Below are positions 29,229 through 64,000 of a DNA stretch of 64,000 nucleotides, piece by piece. The DNA comes from Macrostomum lignano. Taxonomy: Eukaryota. The stretch spans positions 19,609 to 83,608 of the forward strand of contig NIVC01001268.1 of assembly GCA_002269645.1 (NCBI GenBank), in the 5' to 3' direction. A program made the position numbers and the translations under genes. The notes under the pieces are model-generated. The model saw only the letters and a list, made by a program, of their open reading frames with translations. It was not told the DNA's origin and ran no database searches. Every line of letters begins with the position of its first letter. Positions within the stretch are counted from its first letter, which is position 1.

Positions 29229-29789
29229 GGGAGGATCTGTTCCGAGTTTATCTATTTAATTTTAAGTGTATTTTTCCTACTCAGTTGCAGGAAAAGTTTT
29301 TCGCGAACTAACTGAATGTATTAACACCAAAGTTACATGCTACTGATTCCAGTTTGCGGTCAGTTGCCAATGCTTGGAAAGATTTAAGAATTCAAGAGCA
29401 TAAATTCTCTCAGTTTGCCTATTTTGTGTACGTGTAAGTCAGCTCAATCTGACACTGTTATCTCTCACTGCACAGCTATAGAAGTACTTGCAGAATGTGC
29501 TCATTTCCATTGCTGCAAACTTCAGTGAAACAAAAAGTTAAACGATAGTGTCAGACAGCTCAAAAGAAGTCGCTCGCCCTGTGCAGTCTGTCAGTGTCAT
29601 TAAATCTGAGCAGTGGCGCAATGGCTGCACTTTGGACTGACACAGTTTTACTTACTTTACACTAAGCATACGAAGTACACGCAATGACGTGGGCTGCATG
29701 TACATGCCAGTGTGACGCAGTTGAGCTGATCACACCACCGATGAGGCTGGAATTCTGTGTACACTTCTGATTTTCTAAAACTGCAGGAG

Positions 29790-31510
29790 AGATGAATGAG
29801 AAGAGATGGGGAAATGGGGAGGACAGATGGGAAGGAGAGATGGGAAGGGGAGATGGGAAGGAGAGATGGGAAGGAGAGATGGGAAGGAGAGATGGGAAGG
29901 GGAGATGGGGATGAGAGATGAGAAGGAGAGATGGGAAGGAGAGATGGTAAGGGGAGAAGGGAAGATGGGAAGGAGAGATGGAAGGAGATATGAAAGGAGA
30001 GATGGGAAGGAGAGATGGGAAGGAGAGATGGGAAGGAGAGATGGGAAGGAGAGATAGGAAGGAGAGATGGGAAGGGGAGATGGGGAGGAGAGATGGGAAG
30101 GAGAGATGGGAAGGGTAGAAGGGGAGATGGGAAGGAGAGATGGAAGGAGATATGAAAGGAGAGATGGGAAGGAGAGATGGGAAGGAGAAATGGGAAGGAG
30201 AGATGGGAAGGGGAGAAGGGGAGATGGGAAGGAGAGATGGAAGGAGATATGAAAGGGAGATGGGAAGGAGAGATGGGAAGGAGAAATGGGAAGGAGAGAT
30301 GGGAAGGGGAGAAGGGGAGATGGGAAGGAGAAATGGGAAGGAGAGATGGGAAGGAGAGATGGGAAGGAGAGATGGGGAGGAGAGATGGGAAGGAGAGATG
30401 GGGAGATGGGAAGGAGAGATGGGAAGGAGAGATGGGAAGGAGAGATGGGAAGGAGAGATGGAAGGAGATATGAAAGGAGAGATGGGAAGGAGAGATGGGA
30501 AGGAGAAATGGGAAGGAGAGATGGGAAGGGGAGAAGGGGAGATGGGAAGGAGAGATGGAAGGAGATATGAAAGGGAGATGGGAAGGAGAGATGGGAAGGA
30601 GAGATGGGAAGGAGAGATGGGAAGGAGAGATGGAAGGAGATATGAAAGGAGAGATGGGAAGGAGAGATGGGAAGGAGAAATGGGAAGGAGAGATGGGAAG
30701 GGGAGAAGGGGAGATGGGAAGGAGAGATGGAAGGAGATATGAAAGGGAGATGGGAAGGAGAGATGGGAAGGAGAAATGGGAAGGAGAGATGGGAAGGGGA
30801 GATGGGAAGGAGAGATGGGAAGGAGAAATGGGAAGGAGAGATGGGAAGGAGAGATGGGAAGGAGAGATGGGAAGGAGAGATGGGGAGGAGAGATGGGAAG
30901 GAGAGATGGGAAGGAGAGATGGGAAGGGGAGATGGGGAGGAGAGATGGGAAGGAGAGATGGGAAGGAGAGATGGGAAGGAGAAATGGGAAGGAGAGATGG
31001 GAAGGAGAGATGGGAAGGAGAGATGGGGAGGAGAGATGGGAAGGAGAGATGGGAAGGAGAGATGGGAAGGGGAGATGGGAAGGAGAGATGGGAAGGAGAG
31101 ATGGGGAGGAGAGATGGGAAGGAGAGATGGGAAGGAGAGATGGGAAGGGGAGATGGGGAGGAGAGATGGGAAGGAGAGATGGGAAGGAGAGATGGGAAGG
31201 AGAAATGGGAAGGAGAGATGGGAAGGAGAGATGGGAAGGAGAGATGGGGAGGAGAGATGGGAAGGAGAGATGGGAAGGAGAGATGGGAAGGGGAGATGGG
31301 GAGGAGAGATGGGAAGGAGAGATGGGAAGGAGAGATGGGAAGGAGAGATGGGAAGGGGAGATGGGGAGGAGAGATGGGAAGGAGAGATGGGAAGGAGAGA
31401 TGGGGAGGAGAGATGGGAAGGAGAGATGGGAAGGAGAGATGGGAAGGGGAGATGGGGAGGAGAGATGGGAAGGAGAGATGGGAAGGGGAGATGGGGAGGA
31501 GAGATGTAAA
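29790..31510. repeat. Purine-rich 13-bp minisatellite GGGAAGGAGAGAT
   Basis: About 1.7 kb; source of all ORFs 29662-31676. Confidence 0.97.
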
Positions 31511-34122
31511 GGAGAGTCACTTAGAATGTAGGAAACGCTCTGATTCACAGAGCAACGGAGCTTTCCCCAAAGACAAGAAGCACACCTGCCATAGTACGAG
31601 CGAGTCATCACAGCATCCCATTATTCCACATCAGATTGTTTGTGAAAGAAACCTTCTCAGTAAAAATACCTGTTGAAAGTCTTGCTAGACAGGTTGTCCA
31701 CCATACTGACCTTCGCTGCAAACTGAACGCCTCAACCGTCTCGAACTTTCTGAATCTGTTGAAACTGGTTTCAAAGTACCCTTCGTTTATTGGCTTCCTC
31801 GCCAATAGCAGCCCCCCCCCCCACTTTACCGGGAAATCAGCGAAGGAGGTTCCCCCCGGACTTAAAAGTCATAACATGAACTTTTTGGCGCGTGAGAACC
31901 AGAAACTGGTGGAGGATTTGCAACCTGGAGGCACCAGAGAACAGAGCGATTCAGGGGCTTAAGAGAAACAGGTCCGTCCTAATCAAAAAGGGAGACAAAG
32001 GTAACGCAGTAGTCAGGGGGGGGGCGTAGCCCAGCGGTAGCCCAGCTGCTCTGGTGTGCCAGCGACCCAGGCTCGATTCCAAGTGCAGTCGCATTAATTT
32101 GGGGCTGAATTGGAATCTCGGCTTGGATCTGCTCGTGCAATTAACGGCCTTGAGAGCCAACCCCCCAAGGCACAGTGAAGTGTACATGCCTGACGATAAA
32201 ATAAAGTTAGGGCCGCTGTACACTCCTGTGTGAGTGTGTGCCTGCGTACGTATCCGCGCGCTTGTGTGCCTGCTCAGGGAAGTCGGCGGAATGGGCAGCA
32301 ATGCCTCTCGCCGGTTGTGTGCCTATGTCGCTTAAAGTGCGCCAGTGTGCACACAACCCCCCTGCCTCTAATAAAAAACACAGTAGTCATCATGCACCCT
32401 ACGGATTATAAATTTGCAGCTTAAAACCAATTGCTTAACACTAATGCCTAACAACAGCTGGACCAGCCACTGCAACCCGAGACTGCGGAAATTATCAGGG
32501 GATCTTCCTCGATTCACGTAACAAAAAGTTCATACCAGAGAAACAGTTCTCCTATCTTAGTCCCGGGAAGGATTTTCGTCACCGGCATTTCTATACCTGC
32601 TCCCAAAAATTCACAAGTACCCGACCACCTGGCTGATCCCTTTCCGGGTCCCAGCAGACAGACCTATTGTTAGCGGATGCAGTTCTGAGGCCATCGGGGG
32701 CAGAAAAATATACATCGATATTTTCTTAAACCGATTACCCAAGCGCAACCCACTTTCATTAAGGACTCCTACATGTATGACTCCTATGTACAGAAGGATC
32801 GATTCTGGCTACCTGTGATGTCCAGAGCCTAATACTCCATGATCCCCATAGACCAGGGATTGCAGCGATCCAGGTATTCTTTAACTGATACCCAGACCCT
32901 ACCAGACCGGATGCTGAGATAATAAAGCTACAGGAACTGTGTTTGTGCAGGAATCAATTCTTCTTCTTCTCCCACCTCGCCGTCAGCATCCGAATCAATA
33001 TTAGCATCAGAATCGTTGCTTTTTGGAGGACTGCTCATTCTTCTGATGTCTTTGCCTTTTTTCAATGCGAGGTCGCTTACCAGCTGGCTCCAGTACAACA
33101 AAGATCGTTGCTGTTTTGGGCTTCATTGATGCCCGCAATTACCTGCCTTAGCGACTCATGCGTGGTGACCTGTTCGTCAGCTGTCAGCTGACGAGCCTTT
33201 TGCATCACCATCCGCCTCACGTTGCGCATGCGATTATCACCACTGGGCAGTTATAGATGACCACAGTGGGTCCTGAATCCGCTCACCTTGGCCGCGTTCT
33301 TCCACTACAGCTATCGTGTTGGGCCGTTAGCTGACCCAACACAACTTTGTTTATTATTTATTTTCAATAGTTTTTATAGTATACTGGCGTTTCAGTGTTT
33401 ACCTCGCAATAACGCCAACATTGACAATACCCCCCCCCCCAATTGCGAACCCTTCACACCCAAACCCAAATACTCATGGCCCCACCCCAACCCAACCCTC
33501 CTCAATACGATTGACGATCTGAGTTAGTTTACATAGATTAAACCGTCAGTACATTTATATGCTCTTTGTAAAACATTGCGCTTGTAAACATGTTTGTGGG
33601 AACTAAAAAGTTCATTTAGCGCTGCTACATACACCAAAAGTGTTCGCAGAACTTTATAGGTTGTTTTTTTGTTTTCGCCCTCCAGCTAGCCCCACCCCCG
33701 TCCATTGCCCACCCTCCCCGCACTTAACGGGTTTTGTTATCTGTTTGTACCTGACCAACCTCTAATTATCACAATACTCCCCGCGGGACTCCAACCCCCC
33801 CCCAAGAAATTAGACGCGATTACTGATTATTTCATTCAAAGTTTCAGTTATTACTATTGAGTAAGATCTTTTGAATATGCATACAATTATTAATAAATGG
33901 ATAGACAAACTATTTTTACGACGTAGTAACAGTGGCTTATTCAAAAGCAATTGCTTTTTCTAAGTGCATTTTGTTGTGCTTGAACAGAGTGGCGAGGTAG
34001 GAATGATATACGTTTGTGCAGCCCCTAAAATTCTTCAAACTTTCTCAGACATATTGTATCGATAATATTCCACAGGGGGTGCTGCTTAGTGCTTACCATT
34101 CATCTGACCAACCCCATGCTAG

Positions 34123-45269: not shown

Positions 45270-46534
45270 GGGAGGATCTGTTCCGAGTTTATCTATTTAA
45301 TTTTAAGTGGATTTTACCAACTCAGTTGCAGGAAAAGTTTTTCGCGAACTAACTGAATGTATGAAAATGCTTGAAAAGCAAGCAAGCAAATGCCAATGCT
45401 TGAAAAGATAGGAATATAAGAGCATAAATTCTCTCAGTTTGCCTATTTTGTGTACGTGTAGGTCAGCTCAATCTGACACTGTTATCTCTCACTGCACAGC
45501 TATAGGAGTACTTTTAGCATGTTCATTTCCACTGCTGCAAACTTCAGTGAAACAAAAAGTTAAACGATAGTGTCAGTTAGTCCACTTTTCAACTTTTTCC
45601 ACTTCCTGCATATTCCCATTAAAAAATGATTATGACAGCTACTTTAACTTTGCTCTGAAATTACGAGTATAAATGTTCTGGAGCCGAACGAATGGCCATA
45701 TGACCTAAAAAAGCTCTCTTTCTACGAACGTACTCCGAAATTCCGACTTTCAATTTGTACACTCGGGTATTTTTAGCGCAACCTCACACTGCAAGCTTGG
45801 TTTTTTTACCGAGAATGTGCTGTACTTACTTAGCGAGAAAAAAAAGACAAATAAATTTTCACTAGGCAAAATGTTTAAAAATGTAGTTTTTTTAAACTTT
45901 AATATCACATTATCTCATTAAAAATTGTTAGAGCAAACTCTTTGCCATTGAAATCAACGCTAGCTGTATTCTCATTCTGAAACACGGATACTGGAATAAC
46001 TAGATGGGCCACTCAGGTATATATGCTTGGTAAAAAGGCTTTCTACTTTCAGTTCAGTAGCAAAGAAGAATACATAAGCTATTTTATAACAGTTAAGGCA
46101 GCTGAAATGACTTTGATAAGCTTTAGAAGCCCAGAGCTTGCAGGCGTAAACGACTTGCTAATTGGTTCAGCAGTAATGTACATTGGCCAGTCCACTGAAG
46201 TCTACAAGGCAGCTTTAGGGTGGAAGTCCGAGAGAAGGACAATAAAAATTGGGTGGCGGGGCGGGGGTAGCTTAACGGTTGGAAGGTTTAAACTGGGGGT
46301 AGGAGCCAATAAATGAGCCTTGGCTTTAAAAATACAATAAAATGCGTCTGTTTAACTTACTACTGAACTGAAAGTAGCTTACATGCAAATGTGCTGAGTG
46401 GCCCATCTAGTTATTCTAATTCTAGTATCTGTGGTCTAAAACTGCAGAGCAGTCTCGTGAATTTCTTTATTACTTTTTCTACTGGATTGGGCTGGAAGTC
46501 TGTGTGCGCTTCTTCTGATAAACTGCAGGAGAGG

Positions 46535-47245
46535 CGGGAGGAGAAATGAAGGACAGAGGGGAGAGAGATGGAAAGTGAGATGGGAAGGAAATATAGGGAG
46601 ATAGGGAGAGGGATGAGAGGATGGGGAGAGAGACGGGGGAGATGGGGGGATGGGGAGAGAGGGAATTGAGGTGCGAAGGAGAGATCGGGAGATGGGGAGA
46701 GAGATGGGGATGGGGAGAGAGATGGGGGATGGGGAGAGAGATGGGGGGATGGGGAGAGAGATGGGAAGACAGATGGGGGATGGGGAGAGAGATGGGGGGA
46801 TGGGGAGAGAGATGGGAAGACAGATGGGGGATGAGGAGAGAGATGGGAAGAGAGATGGGGGTATGGAGAGAGATAGGAAGAGAGATGGGAGGAGAGATGA
46901 GGGGATGGGGAGAGATGGGGGGATGGGGAGAGAGATGGGGGATGGGGAGAGAGATGGGGGATGGGAAGAGAGATCGGGAGATGGGGAGAGAGATGGGGGA
47001 TGGGGAGAGAGATGGGGGGATGGGGAGAGAGATGGGGGGATGGGGAGAGATAGGGAGAGAGATGGGAAGAGAGATCGGGAGATGGGGAGAGAGATGGGGG
47101 ATGGGGAGAGATAGGGAGAGAGATGGGAAGAGAGATCGGGAGATGGGAAGAGAGATGGGGGATGGGGAGAGATAGGGAGAGAAATGGGAAGAGAGATGGG
47201 GGATGGGGAGAGAGATGGGGGGATGGGGAGAGAGATGGGGAGAGC
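46535..47245. repeat. G-rich repeat (GGGATGGGGAGAGAGAT variants)
   Basis: Occupies the position homologous to the 13-bp array after copy A. Confidence 0.93.
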
Positions 47246-47547
47246 ATTTCAACATTTCAAAGCTTCCATTCCGTGCTTCAATAACATTTGTCAGTTATTT
47301 CTCGTAATTCTCTGTTTAGCCAGGTCCATTCTTGACAGACAGCTCACATTTCAGATGGTTTTTAAAGGAGTCTGGGCTACATGTAAGGGGACGACAAGCT
47401 TTTGTGTTTGCGGATGAGAAGACTGGGTGAATTTTCTGACTGACACACTGGCTGAGAGAGTTCCAGTGTGTTAGTGGGACCATCTGTCGGACTAAAATAC
47501 ACATTCCTGACAACCTGCTTTGCGTGTACTTTCTGGCTTCTGAACTC

Positions 47548-48944: not shown

Positions 48945-49572
48945 CTTTTCCCTGATCCCATTTTCTTTGATCCCTTCTCTAATCCGTTCTCTAATCCTCT
49001 TTTCTAATCCCTTCTCTGAGCCCTTCTCGAATCCCTTCTCTAATCCCTTCTCTAATCCCTTCTCTAATCCGTTCTCTAATCCTCTTTTCTAATCCCTTCT
49101 CTGAGCCCTTCTCTAATCCCTTCTCTAATCCCTTCTCTAATCCCTTTCTCTCTGATCCCTTCTCCAATCCCTTCTCTAATCCCTTTCTCTCTGATCCCTT
49201 CTCTAATCCCTTCTCTAATCCCTTTCTCTCTGATCCCTTCTCTAATCCCTTCTCTAATCCCTTGTCTAATCCCTTGTCCAATACCTTTCTCTCTGATCCC
49301 TTCTCTAATCCCTTCTCTAATCCCTTCTCTATCCCTTTCTCTCTGATCCCTTCTCTAATCCCTTCTCTAATCCCTTCTTTAATCCCTTTCTCTCTGATCC
49401 CTTCTCTAATCCCTTCTCTGATCTCTTCTCTAATCCCTTCTCTGATCCCTTCTCTAATACCTTTCTCTCTGATCCCTTCTCTAATCCCTTCTCGAATCCC
49501 TTCTCTGATCCCTTCTCTAATCCCTTCTCTAATCCCTTTCTCTCTGATCCCTTCTCTAATCCCTTCTCTCTG
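48945..49572. repeat. 12/15-bp pyrimidine repeat CCTTCTCTAATC
   Basis: Seen directly. Confidence 0.95.
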
Positions 49573-49651
49573 ATCACCAACGTTTCCCATGTCTAGTCTC
49601 AAATCCCAAAACCGCTAACCCTTGCGCTCTCTCCCTCCCACCCGTCTCCGC

Positions 49652-51847: not shown

Positions 51848-52179
51848 AGTTTATCCGAATGTCTCCTTTGCAAAGCTCAGAATTTCGTTGTCTGTAGGCA
51901 AATTTGATGCTTTTGGATGAAAATCTCTCTTTGGGTTTTGTGTGTTTGTTAATAACAATACCTACTACAGAATCTGTTGTCCTTGGTTACCAATCCTATC
52001 CAATCATCTGCGCATTGGGAAGGGATGGAGAAGGGGAGAAAGGGGAGAGAGATTAAAGGAAGACTGAGTTAAAGTACTTTCGTTTGGAAGAGTTTATTAC
52101 AATTCTTGCGAGCAATATCATTTCTAAGAATTTTTTATTTTTGGAGTGTTGAAATACCATCCATAGGTATACATGTAGC

Positions 52180-52865
52180 ATCTCTAGGTATAAAATCTCC
52201 AGGTAAAAGATCTCTAGGTAAAATAAGATCTCCAGGTATAAGATCTCCAGGTATAAGGTCTCCAGGTATAAGATCTCTAGGTATAAGGTCTCCAGGTATA
52301 AGATCTCTAGGAATAAGGTCTCTAGGTATAAGATCTCCAGGTATAAGATCTCCAGGTATAAGATCTCCAAGTATAAGATCTCCAGGTATAAGATCTCCAG
52401 GTATAAGATCTCCAGGTATAAGATCTCTAGGTATAAGGTCTCCAGGTATAAGATCTCTAGGAATAAGGTCTCTAGGTATAAGATCTCCAGGTATAAGATC
52501 TCCAGGTATAAGATCTCCAAGTATAAGATCTCTAGGTATAAGGTCTCCAGGTATAAGATCTCCAGGTATAAGATCTCTAGGTGTAAGGTCTCCAGGTATA
52601 AGATCTCCAGGTATAAGATCTCCAGGTATAAGATCTCCAAGTATAAGATCTCTAGGTATAAGGTCTCCAGGTATAAGATCTCCAGGTATAAGATCTCTAG
52701 GTGTAAGGTCTCCAGGTATAAGATCTCCAGGTATAAGATCTCCAGGTATAAGATCTCCAGGTATAAGATCTCCAGGTATAAGATCTCTAGGCAAGATATC
52801 CAGGTTTAAGATCTGTAGGAATAAGATCTCCATGTACAAGATCTCTAAGTATAGGATCTCTAGGC
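52180..52865. repeat. 15-bp minisatellite GATCTCCAGGTATAA
   Basis: About 45 copies; source of ORFs 52053-52876. Confidence 0.97.
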
Positions 52866-53634
52866 AAGATTTCTAAGTGTAAAACCTCTAGGTACATATC
52901 AATAGTACTATTTGCCAAAAAGCAAGCTATCTTTTCTTCCCAAATGAGTATTTGATCAACGCTCAAGCAAGACTCAGATTTAATTCTTAGGAATAGTAAT
53001 ACCTTTAGCAATATTGAAAGTGTCTTTTTTTTCTAAGACCAAGCACTCGGCCGCTTGTCAGAGAAGTCATTATACAATTTCTTTTGACACACAAAATGCC
53101 GAACTTTCTTCCCTGGAGCACAATTTCTTTATGTTGAAAATGCAATTCCGAGTGCTTTAATTGGAAATCTGATTGACTTGGCTCGATTGGTTAAAACCTG
53201 CAAAGGACCTTGTTGTACCTCGAAAAAACTTCAATGCGTAGGTGGGAACAAATAAGGAAGAATGCTTTATGCCTGAGAAATCTTGAATGCCACAGGCGCA
53301 TGTCAATATTCTCTTTCTAGTAAGAAAGTCACACAAGTGGCTGATAGTCGTTACAGATGGCTACTCATGCGAATCTGCTATGTTGCTGTGGTAAAACAAT
53401 GGAAAACTGGCACTGAAAATGCACTTGCATTTCTAATATGCGCGTCACTCAATGCTCAATGCTTTCTGATTCTATTGAATAGGAGCTCATTCTATTGTGT
53501 TTCGCTTCCTTATCTGTTTACGAGTACCCTTTTGAAGCTGCGAGACAGCTGGCTTCTGCAAGACTTTTGCATACCTGTACTCGTACCTCTGCCCACTGCC
53601 ACTTCCAGTATTCCATATTTCATCTATTCCCAGT

Positions 53635-54100
53635 TGACTCACAATCTCACTCAATTTCAATTCCCATCTCACTCAATTTCCATTCCCATCTCACTCACTT
53701 TCTATTCCCATCTCACTCACTTTCAATTTCCATCTCACTCAATTTCCATTCCCATCTCACTCACTTTCCATTCCCATCTCACTTACTTTCCATTCCCATC
53801 TCACTCAATTTCTATTCCCATCTCACTCACTTTCAATTTCCATCTCACTCAATTTCCATTCCCATCTCACTCACTTTCCATTCCCATCTCACTTACTTTC
53901 CATTCCCATCTCACTCAATTTCTATTCCCATCTCACTCACTTTCCATTCCCATCTCACTCAATTTCCATTCCCATCTCACTCAATTTCCATTCCCATCTC
54001 ACTCAATTTCCATTCCCATCTCACTCAATTTCCATTCCCATCTCACTTACTTTCCATTCCCATCTCACTCACTTTCCGCTCTTATCTCCCACTCCCCATC
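53635..54100. repeat. 22-bp repeat CCCATCTCACTCAATTTCCATT
   Basis: About 20 copies. Confidence 0.95.
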
Positions 54101-56548
54101 TCCCACTTCCCACGCCCTCACTGGTCATTCAAGAACGCAAATACTACATAACTGAAACTAGCGATTGAAACGCTATTAAGCAATTTTTAGCGATTTCTGA
54201 ATACAAAAAGTTAATAAAAGCAAAAGTTAAAAGCTTCTTCTTCGTAAAATATGCCTTTCTTCTACAATGCCAACGGGGATCTCATGCAAACACCAAAGCT
54301 TTGTGGGTTTTAATCGGTTTGCAGGTCTGTAAATATACTTACTGTTTTTCTGCTTCTTGTACTTATTTTTGTATCGCGAATGCCATTCGCCCGCGCCCTG
54401 CATTTCCTTCATGCATAGCATCTATTCCCATCTTTTTTGGCTACAAATCACCCATCCACCATGTCTAATCTCCGATCTCCCACGTCTAATCTCAAATCTC
54501 GCATATCTAATCTAAGATCATCCACGTCTAATCTCAAATTGCTATGTCTAATCTCCGATCTACTATATCTAATCTACGATCTACCATATCTAAACTCCAA
54601 TCTCCCAAATATAATGTCTAATCTTCCATATTTAAACTCAGATCTCTCATATCTAATCTTCGACCTTTTATATGAAATCTCCGATCTCCCTGGTCTACAA
54701 TCTAATCTCACTTATCTCACTCTTGAGATCTCGTGCAATCTTCACTTCTCTCAATCTTCAACACCAGCCTACTCATTTCGCATATCCTCTGTATTTTTCC
54801 TGTTCTCTTGGGTGAGGTCTATTTTTGTGAGCAAGTGAATGCTGGAAACTGCGCTCAAACAAACGCCCACAGTTCGGATCAATGTAAACATCAGGTAAAT
54901 TTAAACTTGCTCAGAGCAAACACTGAAGGCTACGCGCCAGCACCTGGCACATTTTTTCTCGCGATTAACGTGTTAGTGGAAACTCAAATTACAAATGTCA
55001 GGACGAAATTTATTAAGGTGAGTTGGCAATAATTTGATAAATATTGCAAGGAACTAACCTAGATATTTAGTTCTCTTACCCCCGATGACTCATGTGATGA
55101 CTCATTTCCTATTAATTTTTCACCCACATGAATCGCTGCACTATTGTAGGGGTTCACTGAAGTGCGATGCACTCAACGAACTCTTGATCCTTCAAGCTAC
55201 GAGTACATTCCGACGTTGGATTGCTTTACGAGCTTCCCCCCCCCAATCACGTGACCTCTCATTATGCGCACGCATCTTGATTTTATTAGCCAATCACAGT
55301 TTGCGCCGGTCAAGGACGCATCAAGGCCTCTGTGTTCACGCATTGCACGAATGCAGTTTTCCACTCTTTCTGACCCCCGGCCCACTCCATCCACAGCAGA
55401 AAGCCGTGCATAACGTATACTTTAAGTAGCTTACATGCAAAAAAGATGAGGGCTTTTAAAAAAGAGGAAATAAAGTAACAATTTTAATGGAACATTCAAT
55501 TTAAATAAACTGGCGATATACTTTTCTATCTGCCTGTGAGATTTAGGGATATTTTAAACAAATATTGATCGAACACGGACAGATGAAGTAGAAGGATGCT
55601 AAAATCGATTTTTTTTAAATTATCGAGCTGGAGGCAGGTAAGGAAACGGTGTATTTGTAGTATCGCTGACACATTTAATACACTCAAGAGAAATCGAACC
55701 CCTACTTAGCGCTATGCATTCTAACCAGCGATATTTTGAATACTAAAAAATTTGGCGCGTTTTTTTTTGAAGAAAAATACTTGGCAAGTTTTGGTAATGG
55801 CAATTTTCTGCGAAAATTTACAAAACAAACAGCCAATGCAAGCGCATAGAAACTGGTTAAGTTCATATCTACGCTTGTAAGTGGTTGCTAATGAAAAGAA
55901 AATATCAACTATGAATTCTATAGAATTTTTTATCAGTTCGCGCAAATAGCTCAAATACAAGACAAATTAAAAAAGTTTTAAAAAATCTCTGCCAACTATA
56001 GTTACCATCACTGCAACACTACTATCCTACAGTAGCATAAATAGAGTGTTACAATCTCTTTTTGTTGAGAAAATAAAGAAATGTAGTAAGTTAAAGTAGT
56101 GGATAGCGGTTTCAGCGAAAGGTTTATATATAGAATTAAGAATACCATCACGCGTTTGTTTATCAAAATAAACTTCAAAGATCTGAGTGAAAAACTGAGA
56201 CAATCTCTGAGTTCAATTAGTCTGAATATTTTATGAAGCTGCAGATATTACTGTCAGAACCATTTGTGTCTATACCATTTAATATATATTATTTTGAAAT
56301 TGAAATTCTGTCTTAGAATCATTTCATTTAAACAAAAATGAAATGTAGTTTCCTGCTTCGGTACAATTTTTACTGGCGGAGCTGCATAACAGGCGCCTTT
56401 CTTTACTCTATTGAAGTTAGTTTAGTCTGTCTTCTCAGTCTACAAGCTGAGTATACTAGTATGAACATTTCTTTAGTAACTATGGCTGCAAATCATCATT
56501 ATCGAGATCACATTGATGTACTTTTAGTTTGGACTTATCACGTCAACG

Positions 56549-57443
56549 TCAGGCTGCATTCTGCCGCATGCCCAAAGTCGGATACTTCAGCGGCCTTCGG
56601 ATAGTCAGCTCGCAGCAGGGCACCTGTTGTCCATTGCTCCGATCGAGCACCCTGTTGATCACTCGGGGCACAACGGCGGTGAACTCTTCGCGATCCTGAT
56701 TGAAATCATCAGCCACCACTGAGCACAGCTGCTGCGTGAACAAGCCGCCACTTTCCGGGTGTCGGCCGCTCAATCGTCCAGGCGATGTGCTATAAAAGTA
56801 CATGCAGTCTTCCAAAGACACCTGATTGACCTGTTGAAACAGGCGGTGATTTGCTGGCGCGTCGCGGCAGGATTGAATAAAAAACAACTTTGGTTTGTCC
56901 TTCAGCTGCTGGCAGAGCTGGAACTTTGAGTAGATAAGCTGGAGAGCCACTTGTCTTCCATCGTGAGAGTAGATAAAATCGTGACCGCCGTGGCTCATGA
57001 GGCACACAATGATGGCTTTGGAGTTTCTCAGCTCCTCTTCCGAGCAGATATTGGCAGGCAGGTGGTCGAAAAAGTGCGCGTTAACGTTTTGTACCTGCCT
57101 GCAGTCGAAGCCGAGGGAGGTAAAGCAGTGGTAAAGCGCGTTTTCGGCCATATCCGCCATGGAGCCCAGGCGTCGCGGCAGGTCCAGCCCAACGAAATCG
57201 TAGATGTTGATCACCAGAGCGATGCCCCGGTGGATGCCGTCCATGGGGTATGGCCCGGCTCTACTGGAGTCTTCCTGACCCCCAGTGGATTCGTTCGGTT
57301 CGCCGCCGCCCGTGGCGCCCTCTTCTTCTCGACCGCTTCCTCCGGGTCCGGAGCCCGAGGGGGGTGGCGGCTGGTCGCCGTTGCCTTGTTCGTCTTGTTC
57401 CATTGTGACGCCTTGACTCGACAGATTGGCTAGGCGCCGAATT
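56549..57443 (-). CDS. Caspase (peptidase C14A) domain exon with catalytic dyad intact
   Basis: RGIALVINIYDF, R(R)LGS..D, IVCLMSHG, KDKPKLFFIQSCR, DCMYFYSTSPG..SGR, GGLFTQQLC, QQVP. Confidence 0.92.
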
Positions 57444-60400
57444 CTGCAGTGAGGCGGTAAGTGAATGTGCGCTTGGTTATCGTGTCAGAATCGGTGACTT
57501 CACAAGGGTTGCTCAGGAGCCCTGGTACCATTCCCTTTCTTTCAGAAACGTACGACCGTTACAATTTCTGCATCTCCTTTCCCAGCATGATTGTTTGTAT
57601 ACGACAAAAATTGTGCACAGCTGGAGCATCTTGTGCGGGTTAGTTTTGGTTGAACACTAAGAAGTAACGTGCGATAATCGATGCGAAATACCTTGTTCGT
57701 ATTACTCGTAACATCAAGTACTCGTATTTAAAACAAGATTTTATAATTTTTTAAAGCGTCTTGGTGGTCGATGAGCGTTAAATGTTTGCGCTGAAACTTT
57801 AACCAATCAAACTTACAATTTCTCTAAAACCGTAGCGCACTCGTAGTGCTCGCAGAACTTCGCCCACTGCTGAGCGTTCATCTTCTGCTCGCCTTCCCTC
57901 CTGCAGAAGTCCAGCTCATCTGGTTTGTTTAGCCGCTCTCTCAGCTCAAGGAGAACGCTTTTGTGACCGCATCGAGCGGCCCAGATCAGAGGGGTGTTGC
58001 CGGAAAAGTCTGCCAGCTTTAAATTGGCACCCAGGTTGCACAGTTCGCGAGCTGTCGACTCCAATCCCAGCTTTGCGGCGTACAGGATTGCCGAGTATCG
58101 CATCGCATCCTGCAATGAATTTCGTACTATCATTTTAAAGGGTTAGCTTGTGAAATCAGAGTCCGAAACTATCTTCTTTAAAATGGGCTCCCTGTGTATT
58201 TTTGGACGTCTAAGGCTGTATCCATCATAGGGACGTTTTCGAAGTTGGAGCAGGTACGGGTATCTTGGTGCATTACTATTCAGTGTGATTTCATAGCACG
58301 ATTGAACTACCTTTTTGTACTACACTCTGTGTTGTCAATCTCAGTTATGTCAGCTTGATCGCGGCACAATGAAGATAAGGCCAATAAGTAAATTACTTCA
58401 AAGTTCGTCATCCGATCAAAGAGTCCTTCCAGCTCTTTCCATCTTGTCAGAAATCTCAAAAGACATGTTTGTTCGGACTGACTGACAAAAGCGTTCGATT
58501 AGAGTTTAGAGGACTAAAACCACCATTTGTATCGATTTAAATACACGGGAACTGCTTTCGCCTTTCTGCCTCTGACGATAATATGAGTACATTAAACTCA
58601 TTTGTGTTACAGTAAATCAATAATTTTCTCAGTAAAGAAACTCATACCTGACGATTAATATCTGCTCCCATATTGACGAGCGGCTCCAGAACGTCTGTGC
58701 GGTTATTTTTGGCCGCAAGAATCAGTGGCGTCTGACGTAGATTGTCCTCGGCATTGATTTCCGCCTTCAAAGCGCTCTCGTTACTTTTAAAAGCCTCGCT
58801 AAACGCCGCCAGTACACTCTTGTGTCCCTTGACGGCAGCCCAGCACAGGGCGGTCCGGCCCTGCACATCTTTTTCACCGATCTCCAAGGATTTTTTGAGC
58901 ATCTCGCTGACGATCTCGTCCTTGCCTTTGATGCACGCAATCATCAGCGGAGTTTGTCTCATTGGCCCGAAAGTTTGTTTGCACTTTTCCGGAGTGTCGC
59001 TTTGCTTCCGGAGCTGCTGGTCCGTCCACTGGTCCGGCGATGCCGGTCTGAAATTGGTTAATAGTTAGCCTGTCTTGAGAATTCTGTAAGTTTTTTAACT
59101 CACTTCCAGTCACCAAACACGAACTACATGCAGCATGCAATACGCAAACCATGCAAATCATGCAAACCATGATTGGAAGATGCATGAACATGCACTTACA
59201 GAGATTCCTCAGTGGAGCCGCCGTCTAGGAAAAACTTCTTAGTCAGGCTGGTCACGGCTGACGCACCGGAGCCGAATCGCTCAGTTCCCTTCTTCATCTC
59301 CGCCAGGCTCAAGCGTCTGTTCACCTCTGCCACCACGGTCTCAATGTGCTCCTTGCTGAACTTCTCATCGCGAATGACGGAGCAAACTGTATCCGAAAGT
59401 GACCCGGTGCTGCCGCCACTGCACAGAAGAAATTCGTGCTCAGGCAGACGGAACGAGGACTCCTCCAGTGAGCAGGCCTCAAGGCCCTCCGGCTGCTTCT
59501 CTGCTTGAATGAAGAAGATCTTCGGCTTGTCCTTCAGACCGGGGCACTGGCTGGCTCGAAATCGGGCCACGATGTCTCTGACTTCGATTTCTTCTCCGTC
59601 GCTGGCAAAGACGCTGCCACCAGTGCCGTGTCCGATGAGGAAGCACACGAAGCTGCTTATGTCAGCGAGATCCTGCGAAGTTACCACATTGTCAATGCAT
59701 CTCCAAAAATCTGTACACCGAGGATTGTTGTACTTCTCAACAATAAAACTGAGTTTTTTGAAAGCATCCTCTATGTTTAGAGCCTTGTTTTCGAGATTTT
59801 TTGAGGGTGGAAACGTCGAAGTGTCGCCGCATTGTTCCACGGTAATAATGAGGCACAACCCCTTTTCTCGAGTCGCCATCTCAAAAGTGTCGCTAGTAGA
59901 CGACCTGTTTGGGGTTAGAAAAAGCAACCTGTTTGTATTGCAGGGTGATTTGCAGATAAATTAACTTTATTTGACACTCACGATGCGTCGGGCATCAGAG
60001 CAAGTTTTGCTCCGTCTTGTGGACTTTCTGTAGGTGTGCTTGGTTCGGATGGACCCGCAATGGCTGAAAGTTTAGGGGTACCGAGTATTTAGGACATTAG
60101 TTCATAAGTTGCTCTAATTATGCTCGATAACTCTAATTTATCAATCAAGCCTGGGTTAGTATATAGTGGCTTACCCCGTCCGTGAAGAAGAAACGGGTGT
60201 TTAAGAAGTTCAGTAGCCGACTTCCTTTGATCTCTTTTCTGAGAGGTGCAGTTTCGGTAGAAGTCCTTTAAAGTGTTCGGGCAATTGTCGGGCAGGGGTG
60301 GTGCTCCCTGGTTTTTAACCCTGCGAACGATGGCTAGCATGTTCTTGCAGTCCCGGTGAGGCCGGTCTCCAGTCACCATCTGGTAAATCACGCAGCCGAA

Positions 60401-61115
60401 CGCCCAGATGTCGGAGGTGCAGCTGTACGGAGTGTCTTCCGTTCCCTCCGTCAGAAACAGCTCGGGCGCCATGAACGCTGGGTCGCCCTTTGGATTTCCA
60501 GTCACGTGATCAGAGGCCGACTCGACGAGTTGAACTGCCAAACCGAAGTCGATTAGCTTAATATTTCGGTTATCTTCTAACACCATGATTGTGCGACAGT
60601 TCACGTCTCTGTGAATAATTATCCTTGGACTCATTGTGTGAAGGTAAGATAGGGCGCTACAGATCTGGAAGGTAAAATTAAAAAACTTGAATCTGAGTTC
60701 AGTTCTTGAGTAGTTTTTTTTTTTAAATATTTATCTTACCTGTTTTGCAAGCTGTGATACAGTGCCGTAGTCTAGCGGCTTGCATCTGTTGATGAAGCTC
60801 TCCAGTGTTTGGCCATCAATCAGCTCCATCGAGACCAAAACGGACGGCTCGGCTGTCACAAGCGACATGTCCAGAAACCGGACAATATTTTCATGTTCCA
60901 ACTTACAAAGACGCTTCTCATCATTGAAAATTTCTTTTAGCTTTCCAGGCATCCCCTGCTGCTGGTCCTCGCCCAGCTGTACAGGCAGTCGGATGACCTT
61001 CGCTGCCCGACGCTCGGTGCCCTGCTTCTCCATGATTTCCAGCACATCGCTGTGCGCGCCTCGGGCTATGTGTCGACTCTTAATCCAGCCAGGAAAAATT
61101 TCGGTCTCCTCGGTA
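56549..61115 (-). CDS. Multidomain kinase - pseudo-caspase - ankyrin repeats - caspase protein; exons (complement) 60740-61115, 60175-60664, 59982-60063, 59200-59904, 58648-59047, [58397-58477 optional], 57817-58109, 56549-57443; first exon probably 61596-61606
   Basis: Every junction is GT-AG with matching phase (0,1,2,2,0,2). The apparent ORF-track stops at 59196 and 57813 lie inside GTAAGT donors. About 1080 aa in total. Confidence 0.8.
57817..59047 (-). CDS. Ankyrin-repeat exons (about 5 repeats)
   Basis: QTPLMIAC..G, GRTALCWAAVKGH, QTPLILAAKNN...LVNMGADIN, YAAKLG...LCNLGANL, GNTPLIWAARCGH. Confidence 0.9.
59200..59904 (-). CDS. Caspase-like domain exon lacking the catalytic Cys (QAE)
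   Basis: KGLCLII, SSFVCFLIGHG..G.VFASDG, QCPGLKDKPKIFFIQAEK, SLTKKFFL. Confidence 0.88.
60175..61115 (-). CDS. Protein kinase domain exons (Ser/Thr-type fold)
   Basis: IARGAHSDV, AAKVI, LEHENIVRF, MELIDG, YLH, HRDVNCRTI, IKLIDFGLA, FMAPE, SDIWAFGC, LLKHPFL. Confidence 0.93.
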
Positions 61116-62323
61116 CTGAAAATCAATATTGTGAATTTTGCACCATCTCGAAGATACAATGCCAATCTTGTTACTAAGGCTGCCTCAGTGAGATTCACTC
61201 ACGCGACTGATGATTCAATATGATCCTCTTTAAATGATAATACCCCTATTGGGATCAATAAGTGGTCTGAGAATTACATGAAGTGAACTCCCTTTGCTAT
61301 GTGCTAAACGGAGCGCATTTAGATGCCTACTACAGGAAATGCTAAACTGTAAGTGCAAATTTAATTTGCTCGCTAAAGGCAGGGTTTCCGATTGGAGAGA
61401 GAACACCGATCAAGCCGGTCAAAGATTGATTAAAAAAGTCCACAGTTCATTTAGAATTGATTTGAACAAAGTAGCAATTTGATCTGTGCAGCCACGGATG
61501 GCCAAGGAGACTTTGATAATCCTCCATCTAAAGTACAAGTTTGGAAACTATAAGCAACGAATTCACTGCTCAACTCTATTAGCTAATTCACTTACCAAAG
61601 CTGCATTTTGACCAGATTACAGGACTGGGGTCTCCTCAGGTAGAATTCTATAAGCTTGGTCTTGACAACGAGAGCTTTGCAAGTAAATAGATTAAGTAGA
61701 CTGCTGTCTAGTTAGAGAGAGGGTCCAAAATGGAGGGTAGAGGGAGGAGGGAGGGTGGCATGGAACACATTGGAGTAATGCACGGGGCGGGTGGCCAGTC
61801 CTCTCTACCCGCATTTACCCTGCGCAGCACCAACCCCAGTGAGCGGCAGAAAGGCAGAAAACTGCATGCACAACTGTACAATACGGAAACAAGAGCTATA
61901 TGTATAGCCTTTATGGCGGATAGCAGAAAAAGCAAAAACTCTAAAGTACGTTTTTGTAATCGGGTCTGATATGGGTTCGGCTGAATTTGAAAAATGAAGA
62001 CGAGATGAGAGCGACGCTACTAAAAGCGCTGCTGGTTTTGCAACGATATTGTAGCCTCTACGCCAAAGCACGTGACAACTGCTTTAGGGTATGAGAGCTC
62101 TTTAGTGCTGGAATGTACGCCAAAGATATGGTACCTTGTTCAGACTTCTTTCCCTAGATGCACACTGTGTCAGACAGTGGTTAGGGCATGTGAATAAAAA
62201 TGAATAATGTGACAACCTCAAAATTGGGTTGCAGAAAATTACGCCAGTTTTCCAGCGTTAAGATTTGCCTAGTAGCGAAATCATTGCTGTAGGGCGATTA
62301 AATTAAACGAGAACTCCCTGTCC

Positions 62324-64000
62324 ATGGCCGAAGGTTCTGAGCCAGGGTAAGAAATAAAACCAAAATTAACGCTTTTATCGAACTGTTTAAGCCATGTAAA
62401 AGTATTATTAATACTTTCAGATTTCAAATTGACTTAAATATAACAAACTTGCTTTTGCTTGCGATTCATTTTGGGATGTTCTAGGAATCGCTTTTGCCGC
62501 CTCAAAAAGACTCTATAGTCCTTGAGCTTGTCCCAAGTGAATGTTGCATAATCTTTAAGTCCTTGCCGATACCGTTGAATTGATCAAATCTTGCACCATT
62601 TCGTAGGCTCTACGACGAGAAATGGGACAAAGTAAAGCTCCTCAGTCGAGGAGAGTTCGGCGAAGAGGTGCACGAGGTGCGGACCGACTTGAAGAATGTC
62701 TGCGCCGCTAAAACCATCCGCCTTCCAGTCACCGAATCGCATCAGGAGTCGGGAGACTTAAAGAACATCGATCGCGTAGTGAAAACAACTCAACAGCTTT
62801 GCCGTCTGCGTCACGACAATATCATCCGTTTCTACGAAATCAAGCACAAGCAGTCGGAGTCAACCGTTGAGGTTCTGATGGAGCTGATCACCGACAAGAC
62901 ACTCGGCGAGTTCATTGGTAGTAAATGTCTGCCGGAAAAAGAAGCTAGGATTTTGTTAAAGCAGGTGAGTGATGATATTGAGCACATTGATCGTAGTATA
63001 ATATCTCGAGATTACTTGCCTACTACTGACGGGGCGCAGGCGCCGCGATTAGGCAGCGAGTCCTCTATCGCAACCTCAAGGTAAAGGAGACCAATGTTTA
63101 ACTTGAGGGTGCGCCCAGCCCCCGCCAGTAGTCGACAAGTTTGCAGAGGAGGCATCGGCATCGGCGACCCTCATCTCCGGGCCGATATCCCGGACAAAGG
63201 CGCGAAGGTCACAGATGTTGTCTGTCTCCCTGAGAATGCAAATCTCCCTGAGGTCGGTTCTGTTTTGCGAGATCAGATATTCCGAGACTTTCCTGTTTAG
63301 ATTATAAGCATAACAAAGCGGGTCTGCCTGTACTCGGCGCAACTGTTACAAAGGAGCTGGTGTTGCTGGTGGAGCAACTCCTGCTAGTATGACGGGTGAT
63401 TTTCGACCTGGGCATGGGTGTAGCCTCACCAAAAGGTGGCTGCCGTCAGGGTTGCTGAACACCTTGGCGAGAGAATCCGCGAGCTTGTTACCCAGGATAT
63501 TTCTGTGATCGGGTGTCCAGGTGATTTATAATAGTTTTAAAGGACTGGAGAGAAATTGAGAACGACTAAAATGACTATTGTAGTCTATAAAAACTGATAA
63601 ACTACGAGTACGAACTTCTTAACGAATTAAAAAGAATATGAAGACTTCCAAGACTTCGAAGCCTTATCTTCTTATTTACCACAGCTAACTGCTATGCACT
63701 CTTCCAACCTAAAAAAACCTTGCATCGTCGCGCTTGTAGGTCTGCGACGCTCTCCGCTATTTGCATTCGGAGACGCCCGACAAGCCGTGCGTTATTCACA
63801 GGCAGATCAACCCCAGCACCATTGTGGTGTCAGCTGATGGGCGCAGGGCTAAGCTACTGACTTCGGATTGGCCATCCTGCTGGTCAGCGCCAAGGCGCAT
63901 CACCTCTCTGTGCTACGCGGCGAACGCACTACATGGCTCCCGAGCTGTTTCTGACCAAAGAGACCGAGGAAACGCTTTACAGCTGCGCCTCGGACATCTG
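62324..64000 (+). pseudogene. Divergent kinase paralog (pseudokinase or pseudogene), exons 62324-62346, 62607-62964, 63740-window end
   Basis: Same intron positions and phases as the minus-strand kinase (phase 2 before the N-lobe, KQ| phase 0). AAKTIRLPV, LRHDNIIRF, MEL, YLH, HRQINPSTI, DFGLA, YMAPELFLT, YSCASDIW. Two single-base frameshifts at ~63857 and ~63928 are needed to keep DFG and MAPE in frame; these could be assembly errors. Confidence 0.72.

What the first reader, a model, noticed from the sequence alone, without database searches (positions are those of the whole stretch)
56549..59904. Intramolecular pseudo-caspase/caspase pair (cFLIP-like regulation in cis)
The N-terminal caspase fold keeps His (GHG) but has QAE instead of QAC, lacks the S1 arginines and has a collapsed small-subunit loop. 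The C-terminal domain keeps SHG, QSCR and both S1 Arg equivalents (RRLGS, SGR). Caspases act as dimers (established), so the two domains could form an intrachain heterodimer bridged by the ankyrin stack, clamping or priming the live protease (inference).
Basis: partly seen in the sequence, partly recalled or inferred. Interest (0 to 1): 0.75.

Follow-up and report, generated by a model that had tools for sequence, protein, structure and literature searches.

The report
Flatworm kinase–pseudocaspase–ankyrin–caspase fusion gene
This gene of the flatworm Macrostomum lignano encodes one long protein made of a kinase-like domain, a catalytically dead caspase, ankyrin repeats and an apparently live caspase. 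The dead/live pairing is real and old within a small gene family, but nobody has yet shown that the two halves regulate each other.

Summary
Window 56549-59904 (minus strand) encodes a Cys-less caspase fold (GHG/QAE, no S1 arginines, 11-residue L3-loop deletion), about six ankyrin repeats, a 62-residue disordered linker, and a caspase with SHG, QSCRD and both S1 arginines.

Four upstream exons (61606-59982) splice in frame and add a protein-kinase domain. This gives an 8-exon, 1083-aa kinase–pseudocaspase–ANK–caspase protein that is 99.4% identical to M. lignano A0A1I8JG37.

Four paralog types in M. lignano share this order, and the first caspase fold lacks Cys in all four (E, H, E, R), so the loss is old. 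One type is the head-to-head neighbour in this window. Another has all three enzyme folds dead.

The two caspase folds are only about 20% identical and fall in separate clades. The gene therefore looks like a fusion of a kinase-caspase with an ANK-caspase, not a tandem duplication.

The intrachain heterodimer is not shown. AlphaFold2 folded both domains well but did not dock them confidently (pTM 0.53), and the ANK stack is followed by a floppy linker rather than a rigid bridge.

The concept has a precedent in coral caspase-X (2016), and a M. lignano "kinase-prodomain caspase" was noted in 2024. I rate this a new variant of a known kind.

The parts
61596..61606 (-). Exon 1: start codon, ATGCAGCTTTG (MQLC-), with a GTAAGT donor
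   Evidence: Matches the N-terminus MQLCTEETEIF of UniProt/NCBI M. lignano models P0001, P0176 and P0180.
60740..61115 (-). Exon 2: kinase N-lobe (degenerate Gly-loop ARGAHSDV, beta3 Lys in AAKVI, alphaC Glu)
   Evidence: Pfam Pkinase; AG/GT boundaries.
60175..60664 (-). Exon 3: kinase C-lobe. HRDVNCRT has Asn for the catalytic-loop Lys and Thr for the Asn; DFG and APE are present
   Evidence: Pfam Pkinase 3.3e-31; alignment to WNK1 IHRDLKCDN.
59982..60063 (-). Exon 4: Ser/Pro-rich linker (AIAGPSEPSTPTESPQDGAKLALMPDAS). Its phase-2 donor TC|GTGAGT joins exon 5
   Evidence: Junction ...PDAS|SSTSD is present in P0001, P0176, P0177 and P0180.
59200..59904 (-). Exon 5: the complete pseudo-caspase domain (aa 329-555; GHG, QAE, L3-loop deletion, beta6 SAVTSLTKKFFL)
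   Evidence: Pfam C14 1.7e-22; PDB phmmer 1.8e-20 to an ancestral effector caspase; AF2 pLDDT about 90 over most of the domain, lower in the small-subunit region; alignment A2.
58648..59047 (-). Exon 6: the first ankyrin repeats
   Evidence: Pfam Ank_2 1.5e-17; AF2 pLDDT>90 and Foldseek TM 0.84 to DARPins/ANK proteins.
57817..58109 (-). Exon 7: the remaining ankyrin repeats (about six in all, aa 556-786)
   Evidence: Pfam Ank_2 3e-08; helix pairs in the AF2 model.
56549..57443 (-). Exon 8: 62-aa disordered linker (aa 787-848), then the putatively live caspase domain (aa 849-1083; SHG, QSCRD, S1 Arg x2, SLED|C in the intersubunit stretch), then stop TGA 56551-56549
   Evidence: Pfam C14 5.9e-33; caspase-7 5.1e-21 with the catalytic and S1 residues aligned; Foldseek TM(target) 0.87-0.88 to caspase-7; linker pLDDT<50.
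62324..64000 (+). Head-to-head paralog, with the same four-module architecture in its full-length form P0027. Only the first exons (pseudokinase, HRQ) lie in the window
   Evidence: tblastn of P0027. P0027 has GCG/QTH in the first caspase fold and SHG/QACRG in the second.

Best explanation
One 8-exon gene of Macrostomum lignano encodes a 1083-aa protein with this order: atypical (possibly weak or dead) protein kinase, pseudo-caspase, about six ankyrin repeats, a 62-aa flexible linker, and a caspase with a complete catalytic dyad and Asp-binding S1 pocket.

The gene arose by joining a kinase-caspase unit to an ANK-caspase unit from a different caspase lineage. The kinase-proximal caspase lost its nucleophile before the family diversified.

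Most likely mechanism (inferred, not shown): the dead fold is a built-in, cFLIP-like non-catalytic partner for the live C-terminal caspase. It would pair with the live domain through the beta6 edge, as caspase dimers do. The flexible linker permits this within one chain, and pairing between chains is not excluded. The pairing would set whether the live domain is restrained or primed.

On this reading the kinase-like and ankyrin modules are input or recruitment domains. They play the role that DED or CARD prodomains play in other initiator caspases.

Shown here: gene structure, domain identities, catalytic-residue status, age of the Cys loss, and the separate origin of the two folds. Inferred: proteolytic activity, the pairing, and its regulatory sign.
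For: - Gene model: seven GT-AG introns, all in frame over 3252 nt. The product is 99.4% identical to the 1083-aa P0180. The transcript-guided NCBI model P0177 crosses the pseudo-caspase/ANK exon junction, and paralog P0027 is annotated full-length with the same order.
- Live domain: His, Cys, Gln and both S1 Arg align with caspase-7. The caspase fold has TM 0.87-0.88. Asp sits before the small subunit (SLED|C; AHED|C in P0027).
- Dead domain: Cys is replaced in all four paralog types (E/H/E/R), and the L3 loop is shortened in all.
- Constraint on the dead domain: 60% identity to the type-C paralog against 46% (kinase), 49% (ANK) and 31% (C-domain). There are 0 substitutions among four near-identical copies. 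Most of the fold has pLDDT about 90, lower in the small-subunit region. The beta6 motif SLTKKFFL is conserved.
- Interface hint: at the position aligned with caspase-3 Val266 (centre of the dimer interface), the dead N-type domains have V/V/V/I. The C-type domains have E/Q/R/E. Two such charged or polar residues facing each other would disfavour C:C homodimers.
- Precedent: in coral caspase-X (inactive plus active caspase in one chain), deleting the inactive domain increased cell killing, and a beta6-beta6 model was proposed (PMC4715348).
- Separate origin of the two folds: N3 clade bootstrap 96.5%, C4 clade 97.5%, and N+C monophyly 0%.
Against: - AF2 did not dock the two caspase folds confidently. 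pTM was 0.53 for the ANK-deleted construct with an even 30-sequence tandem-caspase MSA. It was 0.46 with ANK, though that MSA was flawed. No PAE or coordinates were available.
- The type-C paralog has both caspase folds dead (QTE and QANRG) and a dead kinase (HRN/NFG), yet keeps the same architecture. The conserved role of the first fold therefore cannot be only to control proteolysis in cis.
- QSCRD departs from the QACXG consensus (Ala to Ser, Gly to Asp), so activity is unproven.
- The Val266 correspondence rests on an HMM alignment plus DSSP of a model, not on a solved structure.
- No expression or biochemical data exist for this gene.
Confidence: 0.4

Rival explanations
1. Pairing in trans. 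The dead fold acts as an oligomerisation module, forming dead:dead homodimers or pairing with the live domain of a second chain or of a paralog. This brings two chains together and activates the live domains by induced proximity, replacing the DED/CARD platforms that flatworms lack.
For: The beta6 motif and the hydrophobic Val at the interface centre are conserved in the dead folds. Several co-expressed paralog types could mix. AF2 gave no confident cis docking. Platyhelminths lost FADD and DED caspases (PMC11463336).
Against: The 62-aa flexible linker makes cis pairing sterically easy and kinetically favoured. There are no data on oligomeric state.
Confidence: 0.25
2. The ankyrin stack, not the dead caspase, is the cis regulator or the substrate/ligand receptor of the live caspase. 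It could bind in the way DARPins bind and inhibit caspases. On this reading the dead fold serves the kinase module, for example as scaffold or docking site.
For: ANK-caspase is a stand-alone unit in M. lignano (P0062, P0054) and in parasitic flatworms (PMC11463336). ANK has the highest pLDDT and is 43-50% conserved among paralogs. The dead fold always follows the kinase directly, as the live caspase does in P0104.
Against: The dead fold is more conserved than ANK between the two closest paralog types and is invariant among recent copies. This reading does not explain why a complete caspase fold with an intact beta6 is kept.
Confidence: 0.15
3. Evolutionary relic. The dead fold is a decaying remnant of the ancestral kinase-caspase gene. 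It is kept only as a spacer after fusion with an ANK-caspase and has no effect on the live protease.
For: The two folds come from different lineages. This M. lignano clade loses Cys often: P0056 has QTS, P0052 has QAG and P0043 has QAN. The substrate loops are collapsed.
Against: The fold is well predicted (pLDDT about 90 over most of it), is the best-conserved domain between types A and C (60%), and has 0 substitutions in recent copies. It is retained in all four paralog types.
Confidence: 0.12
4. Gene-model artefact. Kinase-pseudocaspase and ANK-caspase are two adjacent genes or transcripts, so the 'intramolecular' pair does not exist.
For: NCBI Mlig_3_7 models of three copies stop after the dead domain or early in ANK (533, 559 and 583 aa). 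In-frame stop codons sit at the start of introns 5, 6 and 7, so intron retention would give short isoforms.
Against: Those short models end because of a 10-nt deletion or a 1-nt indel in those copies, not at a gene boundary. P0177 reads across the exon 5/6 junction. The window copy is open throughout with canonical in-frame splice sites. The transcript-guided model of paralog P0027 is full length (1072 aa). The type-C paralog carries linker and second caspase in one continuous ORF.
Confidence: 0.05

Closest known systems
Coral caspase-X (Acropora millepora AmCaspase Xa-d; Moya et al. 2016, PMC4715348)
   Same: It has an N-terminal inactive caspase domain and a C-terminal active caspase domain in one chain. 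Its authors proposed a cFLIP/caspase-8-like beta6-beta6 pairing in cis. Removing the dead domain increased killing of HeLa cells.
   Different: Caspase-X has no kinase and no ankyrin repeats, and its dead domain lacks both His and Cys. It was reported as coral-restricted. The flatworm family is known only from M. lignano, and its two folds come from two separate caspase clades. An independent origin is therefore likely, though this is inferred; coral sequences were not placed in my tree.
cFLIP(L)/procaspase-8 heterodimer (vertebrates)
   Same: A Cys-less caspase fold partners a live initiator-type caspase.
   Different: cFLIP and caspase-8 are two separate polypeptides recruited through tandem DEDs, and cFLIP is a close paralog of caspase-8/10. 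Here there are no DEDs, the pair is on one chain, the folds are about 20% identical and from different clades, and pairing is not demonstrated.
[quoted passage not shown]
   Same: Ankyrin repeats lie N-terminal to a caspase domain. A kinase-bearing M. lignano caspase was already listed there as sister to the ANK caspases.
   Different: The main text of that paper does not mention a second, dead caspase fold, the four-module order or the paralog family. Its supplement was not available. I cannot tell whether its sequence is this gene or the ANK-kinase-caspase P0104.
M. lignano ANK-kinase-caspase P0104 (PAA47029.1) and relatives P0054 and P0192
   Same: They are the nearest Cys-bearing relatives of the dead domain (28-30% identity, same clade). 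In P0104 a related kinase (37% identity) is likewise followed directly by a caspase.
   Different: They have a single caspase fold, which is live (AHG/QACRG with both S1 Arg). They have no C-terminal ANK-caspase unit.
Tandem dead/live caspase proteins in arthropods and molluscs (e.g. Frankliniella occidentalis 'caspase-2 isoform X1', Penaeus vannamei LOC113826633, Mytilus edulis)
   Same: Two or three caspase folds sit in one predicted chain, with one lacking His and/or Cys.
   Different: They have no kinase or ANK, and the order of live and dead folds varies. Most are unverified predictions, although the shrimp one recurs in transcript assemblies.

Membership tests
Caspase (MEROPS C14A), C-terminal domain | Caspase alpha/beta fold | tested here: met
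   Pfam C14 5.9e-33. AF2 pLDDT about 90. Foldseek TM(target) 0.87-0.88 to caspase-7.
Caspase (MEROPS C14A), C-terminal domain | His-Cys catalytic dyad in SHG and QACXG contexts | tested here: met
   MSHGG and QSCRD align with caspase-7 SHG and QACRG. The pentapeptide is non-canonical at positions 2 and 5.
Caspase (MEROPS C14A), C-terminal domain | S1 pocket Arg, Gln and Arg that bind the P1 Asp | tested here: met
   RRLGS aligns with VRNG, the Gln of QSC is present, and SGR aligns with SWR.
Caspase (MEROPS C14A), C-terminal domain | Asp-directed proteolytic activity | not testable with these tools
   This needs a recombinant enzyme assay.
Pseudo-caspase (cFLIP-like in function), N-terminal domain | Caspase fold kept, catalytic Cys lost | tested here: met
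   Pfam C14 1.7e-22. QAE stands at the QAC position. pLDDT is about 90 over most of the domain.
Pseudo-caspase (cFLIP-like in function), N-terminal domain | Heterodimerises with a live caspase through beta6 | tested here: inconclusive
   AF2 pTM was 0.53 (ANK-deleted construct) and 0.46 (with ANK). No PAE or coordinates were available.
cFLIP family (homology) | Tandem DEDs and membership of the caspase-8/10/cFLIP clade | tested here: not met
   There is no DED in Pfam. The dead domain nests among M. lignano-specific caspases, away from the caspase-8-like and caspase-10 sequences in the NJ tree.
Coral caspase-X type architecture | Inactive caspase domain N-terminal to an active one in one chain | tested here: met
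   Gene model and domain status.
Coral caspase-X type architecture | Common descent with Acropora caspase-X | not tested
   Coral sequences were not in my set. The restriction of this architecture to M. lignano in a search of 1.84 billion representatives argues for independent origin.
Platyhelminth ANK-caspase | Ankyrin repeats immediately upstream of the caspase domain | tested here: met
   Pfam Ank families at aa 581-786, followed by linker and caspase.
Platyhelminth ANK-caspase | Placement in or next to the ANK-caspase clade | not tested
   This rests only on the literature statement that a M. lignano kinase-caspase is sister to the ANK caspases. Parasite ANK-caspases were not among my top 150 hits.
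Active eukaryotic protein kinase | Kinase fold | tested here: met
   Pfam Pkinase 2.6e-44 on P0180. WNK1/3, SLK, BRAF and TAK1 are the best solved relatives.
Active eukaryotic protein kinase | Full catalytic set (Gly-loop, beta3 Lys, alphaC Glu, HRDxKxxN, DFG) | tested here: inconclusive
   The Lys, Glu, HRD Asp and DFG are present. HRDVNCRT has Asn for the catalytic-loop Lys and Thr for the Mg-binding Asn, and the Gly-loop is degenerate. Paralogs are clearly dead: HRQ in one, HRN plus NFG in another.

The most novel reading that the evidence does not exclude
A single-chain analogue of the RIPK1/cFLIP/caspase-8 switch. In a lineage that lost FADD and DED caspases, a (pseudo)kinase sensor, a pseudo-caspase and an ANK-caspase were welded into one polypeptide. 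The kinase-like module, through phosphorylation or ligand-induced conformational change, would decide whether the dead fold restrains or primes the live caspase. The live caspase carries Glu at the caspase-3 Val266-equivalent position. It may therefore be active without cleavage and so need a built-in brake. The paralog set (live/live, dead-kinase/live-caspase, all-dead) would then form a graded regulator/decoy system for cell death or immunity.
Probability: 0.12. Interest if true: 0.8.

Novelty: new variant of a known kind. Interest (0 to 1): 0.55.

Why it matters
Pseudo-caspases are rare. cFLIP is the only human one, and how a dead fold tunes a live caspase is still debated. A natural single-chain dead/live pair that also carries a kinase-like and an ankyrin module would show how initiator-caspase control can be rebuilt without death-fold adaptors. 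That is relevant here because flatworms lack FADD and DED caspases. M. lignano supports RNAi and transgenesis, so the hypothesis can be tested in vivo. The paralog series, which runs from a form with an apparently live caspase and a possibly active kinase to one with every enzyme fold dead, provides ready-made natural mutants. If the dead fold proves inert, the gene is still a clear example of exon-wise domain fusion and of repeated pseudoenzyme formation in one lineage-specific caspase expansion.

Tried and rejected
- Word-indexed homolog search with the dead domain alone found nothing, not even the 98%-identical P0001. This is an index limitation, not absence. The exhaustive profile search replaced it.
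- The search for related loci on genome contigs was pointless, because that collection holds only prokaryotes.
I therefore obtained no transcript contigs for the gene itself.
- The first AF2 job (dead domain to C-terminus, 762 aa) used a MAFFT alignment in which single-domain caspases were split: their large-subunit part went to the dead fold and their small-subunit part to the live fold. I discount its pTM of 0.46. Alignments A4 and A6 had similar problems. A5, which contains only natural tandem-caspase proteins, gave even coverage and was used for the second job.
- Foldseek against the PDB returned only single-domain caspase or ANK matches, so it cannot report the relative placement of the two folds.
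- I considered a recent tandem duplication of one caspase. I rejected it because the folds are about 20% identical and never grouped together in 200 bootstraps.
- I considered a polycistronic arrangement, with the kinase gene ending at TGA 59981 followed by AATAAA. I rejected it once the phase-2 donor TC|GTGAGT was read correctly and matched the annotated junction PDAS|SSTSD.
- dN/dS between paralogs was not attempted. At 36-60% amino-acid identity, synonymous sites would be saturated, and DNA of the near-identical copies could not be fetched.
- The supplement of PMC11463336 is not held, and the gene IDs appear in no indexed paper.
Full report
**What the window is.** The sequence is eukaryotic, with spliced genes and many simple tandem repeats. 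The protein I assembled from the region is 98-99.7% identical to Macrostomum lignano proteins. The window therefore comes from this free-living flatworm.

**Checking the observation.** On the minus strand, four open blocks between 59904 and 56549 join through canonical GT-AG introns with matching phases. Pfam finds Peptidase_C14 in the first block (1.7e-22) and the last (5.9e-33), and ankyrin repeats in the two middle blocks.

Against solved structures, the last block aligns with caspase-7 (5.1e-21). SHG, QSC(R), the Arg of RRLGS and the Arg of SGR lie on caspase-7 SHG, QAC(R), VRNG and SWR. The first block aligns with an ancestral effector caspase (1.8e-20), but QAE stands where QAC should be.

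In a 13-sequence alignment of family members, the first fold lacks 11 residues of the loop that carries the second S1 arginine.

Upstream ORFs at 61198-60089 are a protein kinase. The database protein P0001 joins them to the dead caspase. I traced the junctions in the window. They are an 11-nt start exon (61606-61596), two kinase exons (61115-60740, 60664-60175) and a short linker exon (60063-59982). The phase-2 donor of the linker exon, TC|GTGAGT, meets the acceptor at 59904.

The full coding sequence is 3252 nt in 8 exons. It encodes 1083 aa with this order: kinase 1-318, pseudo-caspase 329-555, ANK 556-786, low-complexity linker 787-848 and caspase 849-1083. It differs at 6 residues from UniProt A0A1I8JG37 (P0180).

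The kinase keeps the beta3 Lys, the HRD Asp and DFG. However, it has HRDVNCRT where WNK1 has HRDLKCDN, and its Gly-loop is degenerate. It may be weak or inactive.

**Is it one gene?** Three NCBI (Mlig_3_7) models of near-identical copies are only 533-583 aa long. They end because of a 10-nt deletion or a 1-nt indel in those copies, and one of them (P0177) reads across the pseudo-caspase/ANK exon junction. The paralog P0027 is annotated full length with the same four modules. I put the two-gene artefact at about 5%.

**The family.** An exhaustive profile search of 1.84 billion representative proteins used a profile of the two window domains, so that tandem-caspase proteins would rise to the top. 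It found this architecture only in M. lignano. Four paralog types exist.

| Type | Representative | Kinase | First caspase fold | Second caspase fold |
|---|---|---|---|---|
| A | this gene | HRD/DFG | GHG/QAE | SHG/QSCRD |
| B | P0027 | HRQ | GCG/QTH | SHG/QACRG |
| C | P0003/P0181 plus P0043 | HRN/NFG | GHG/QTE | SHG/QANRG |
| D | P0045 | HRD/DFG | ASG/QAR | model stops after ANK |

- Type B is the head-to-head neighbour in this window. Its ATG is at 62324, 717 bp from the ATG of the studied gene.
- Type C is annotated as two partial genes. The DNA (L001) shows one continuous ORF across a GGT repeat.
- The first fold lacks Cys in all four types, so the loss is not recent.

**Origin of the two folds.** The dead fold is 57%, 40% and 33% identical to the first folds of types C, D and B. 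It is 28-30% identical to single, live M. lignano caspases: P0104 (ANK-kinase-caspase), P0054 (ANK-caspase) and P0066/P0192 (Ras/Roc-caspase). It is only 20-21% identical to the C-terminal folds.

In a neighbour-joining tree with 200 bootstraps, the first folds of types A, C and D group at 96.5%. The C-terminal folds plus the stand-alone ANK-caspase P0062 group at 97.5%. The two groups never join.

Each caspase fold occupies a single exon. The simplest history is a fusion of a kinase-caspase gene with an ANK-caspase gene, followed by loss of the nucleophile in the kinase-proximal fold.

**Is the dead fold constrained?**
- Between types A and C it is the best-conserved module: 60%, against 46% for kinase, 49% for ANK and 31% for the second fold.
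- Among four near-identical copies it has 0 substitutions, against 1-23 in the kinase and 2-5 in ANK.
- AF2 predicts most of it at pLDDT about 90, lower in the small-subunit region.
- Its C-terminal beta6 motif SLTKKFFL is conserved.

These points argue against a decaying relic. They do not say what the fold does.

**Testing the proposed intrachain heterodimer.** The first AF2 run (dead fold to C-terminus) gave pTM 0.46, but its alignment was chimeric. I used an alignment of 29 natural tandem-caspase proteins with even coverage of both folds.

The result was mean pLDDT 80.4. Both folds were near 90, the linker was below 50, and pTM was 0.53. A single confidently placed fold would give roughly 0.4, and a confident pair roughly 0.75-0.8. 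The value is therefore intermediate, and the prediction neither establishes nor excludes an interface.

The tool returns no coordinates or PAE. Foldseek matches only single chains, with TM 0.87-0.88 to caspase-7. In the run with ANK, the repeats are very confident and the 62 residues after them are disordered. The ANK stack is thus not a rigid bridge between the two folds.

**A sequence hint for complementarity.** I used hmmalign and the DSSP strands of the model (beta6 = SAVT in the dead fold, CCEL in the live fold). At the position aligned with caspase-3 Val266, the centre of the dimer interface, residues are as follows.

| Domain group | Residue at the Val266-equivalent position |
|---|---|
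| Four dead first folds | Val, Val, Val, Ile |
| Four C-type folds | Glu, Gln, Arg, Glu |

V266E is known to activate uncleaved procaspase-3 (PMC2805924). This suggests the live fold may dislike homodimerising and may be active without cleavage. The correspondence rests on an alignment and a model only.

**Comparison with what is known.** Coral caspase-X is the closest functional precedent. It has an inactive and an active caspase domain in one chain, its authors proposed a cFLIP/caspase-8-like beta6 model, and killing was stronger when the dead domain was removed (PMC4715348).

[quoted passage not shown] It also reported that platyhelminths lost FADD and DED caspases (PMC11463336). Its main text does not mention a dead caspase fold.

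Dead/live tandem caspases also turn up in thrips, leafhopper, shrimp, mussel and a parasitoid wasp. The theme therefore recurs. The combination with a kinase-like and an ankyrin module, and the paralog series, is what is new here.

**Verdict.** I rate the finding a new variant of a known kind, of moderate interest.

Noticed in passing
window 62324-64000 (+): A head-to-head paralog of type P0027/PAA89054.1 (HRQ pseudokinase, GCG/QTH dead caspase, ANK, SHG/QACRG caspase) starts 717 bp from the studied gene's ATG and runs off the window. Relative to P0027, the window copy has two 1-nt deletions near 63856 and 63925. It is either a pseudogenised copy or carries assembly indels.
   Followed up: partly
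window 56609-56611 (-), Glu in beta6 'CCEL' of the live caspase: The live domain has Glu at the position aligned with caspase-3 Val266, the centre of the dimer interface. C-type relatives have E/Q/R/E there, and the dead first folds have V/V/V/I. V266E makes procaspase-3 active without cleavage (PMC2805924).
   Followed up: partly
L001 6557-10732 (NIVC01000006.1): The type-C paralog is annotated as two partial genes (PAA94593, PAA94592). It is one continuous ORF across a GGT (poly-Gly) repeat. All three of its enzyme folds are dead: HRN/NFG kinase, QTE caspase and QANRG caspase.
   Followed up: yes
copies of the studied gene in other M. lignano assemblies (P0175, P0176, P0177): Two copies carry a 10-nt deletion in the dead-caspase exon (window equivalent near 59290), and one carries a 1-nt indel early in the ANK exon. 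These give 533-583-aa kinase-pseudocaspase models. It is unclear whether they are real truncated alleles or long-read errors.
   Followed up: partly
related proteins P0104, P0054, P0192, P0056, P0052 (M. lignano): The caspase clade that gave rise to the dead fold carries varied N-terminal modules: ANK-kinase, ANK, two Ras/Roc GTPase domains, and LRAT. It has lost the catalytic Cys several times (QTS in P0056, QAG in P0052).
   Followed up: partly
proteins P0060, P0035, P0132 (other taxa): P0060 (source not looked up) is a tandem (HRN pseudokinase-caspase) x2. P0035, from the jellyfish Sanderia malayensis, is (ANK-caspase) x2. P0132, from the snail Batillaria, is a kinase-caspase. Kinase or ANK fusions to caspases therefore recur outside flatworms.
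   Followed up: no
window 17235-17852 (+) and 7610-8197 (+): These are ORFs with a RING-H2 finger (Pfam zf-RING_2, 1.3e-14) and a SWIB/MDM2 domain (8.2e-10). They are probably exons of unrelated genes.
   Followed up: partly
window 8171-9207, 20051-21098, 26541-27376, 29662-31676, 46411-47255, 48991-49602, 52053-52876, 53283-54155: Long 'ORFs' on both strands are translated simple tandem repeats with strong GC skew (for example 0.76 at 30-32 kb). They are not genes. They make up a large share of the window.
   Followed up: no
window 59199, 58647, 57816 (intron starts): In-frame stop codons lie at the first codons of introns 5, 6 and 7 (TAA, TGA, TAA). Intron retention would therefore yield kinase-pseudocaspase or kinase-pseudocaspase-ANK isoforms without the live caspase. 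This may simply reflect the GTAAGT/GTATGA donor consensus.
   Followed up: no
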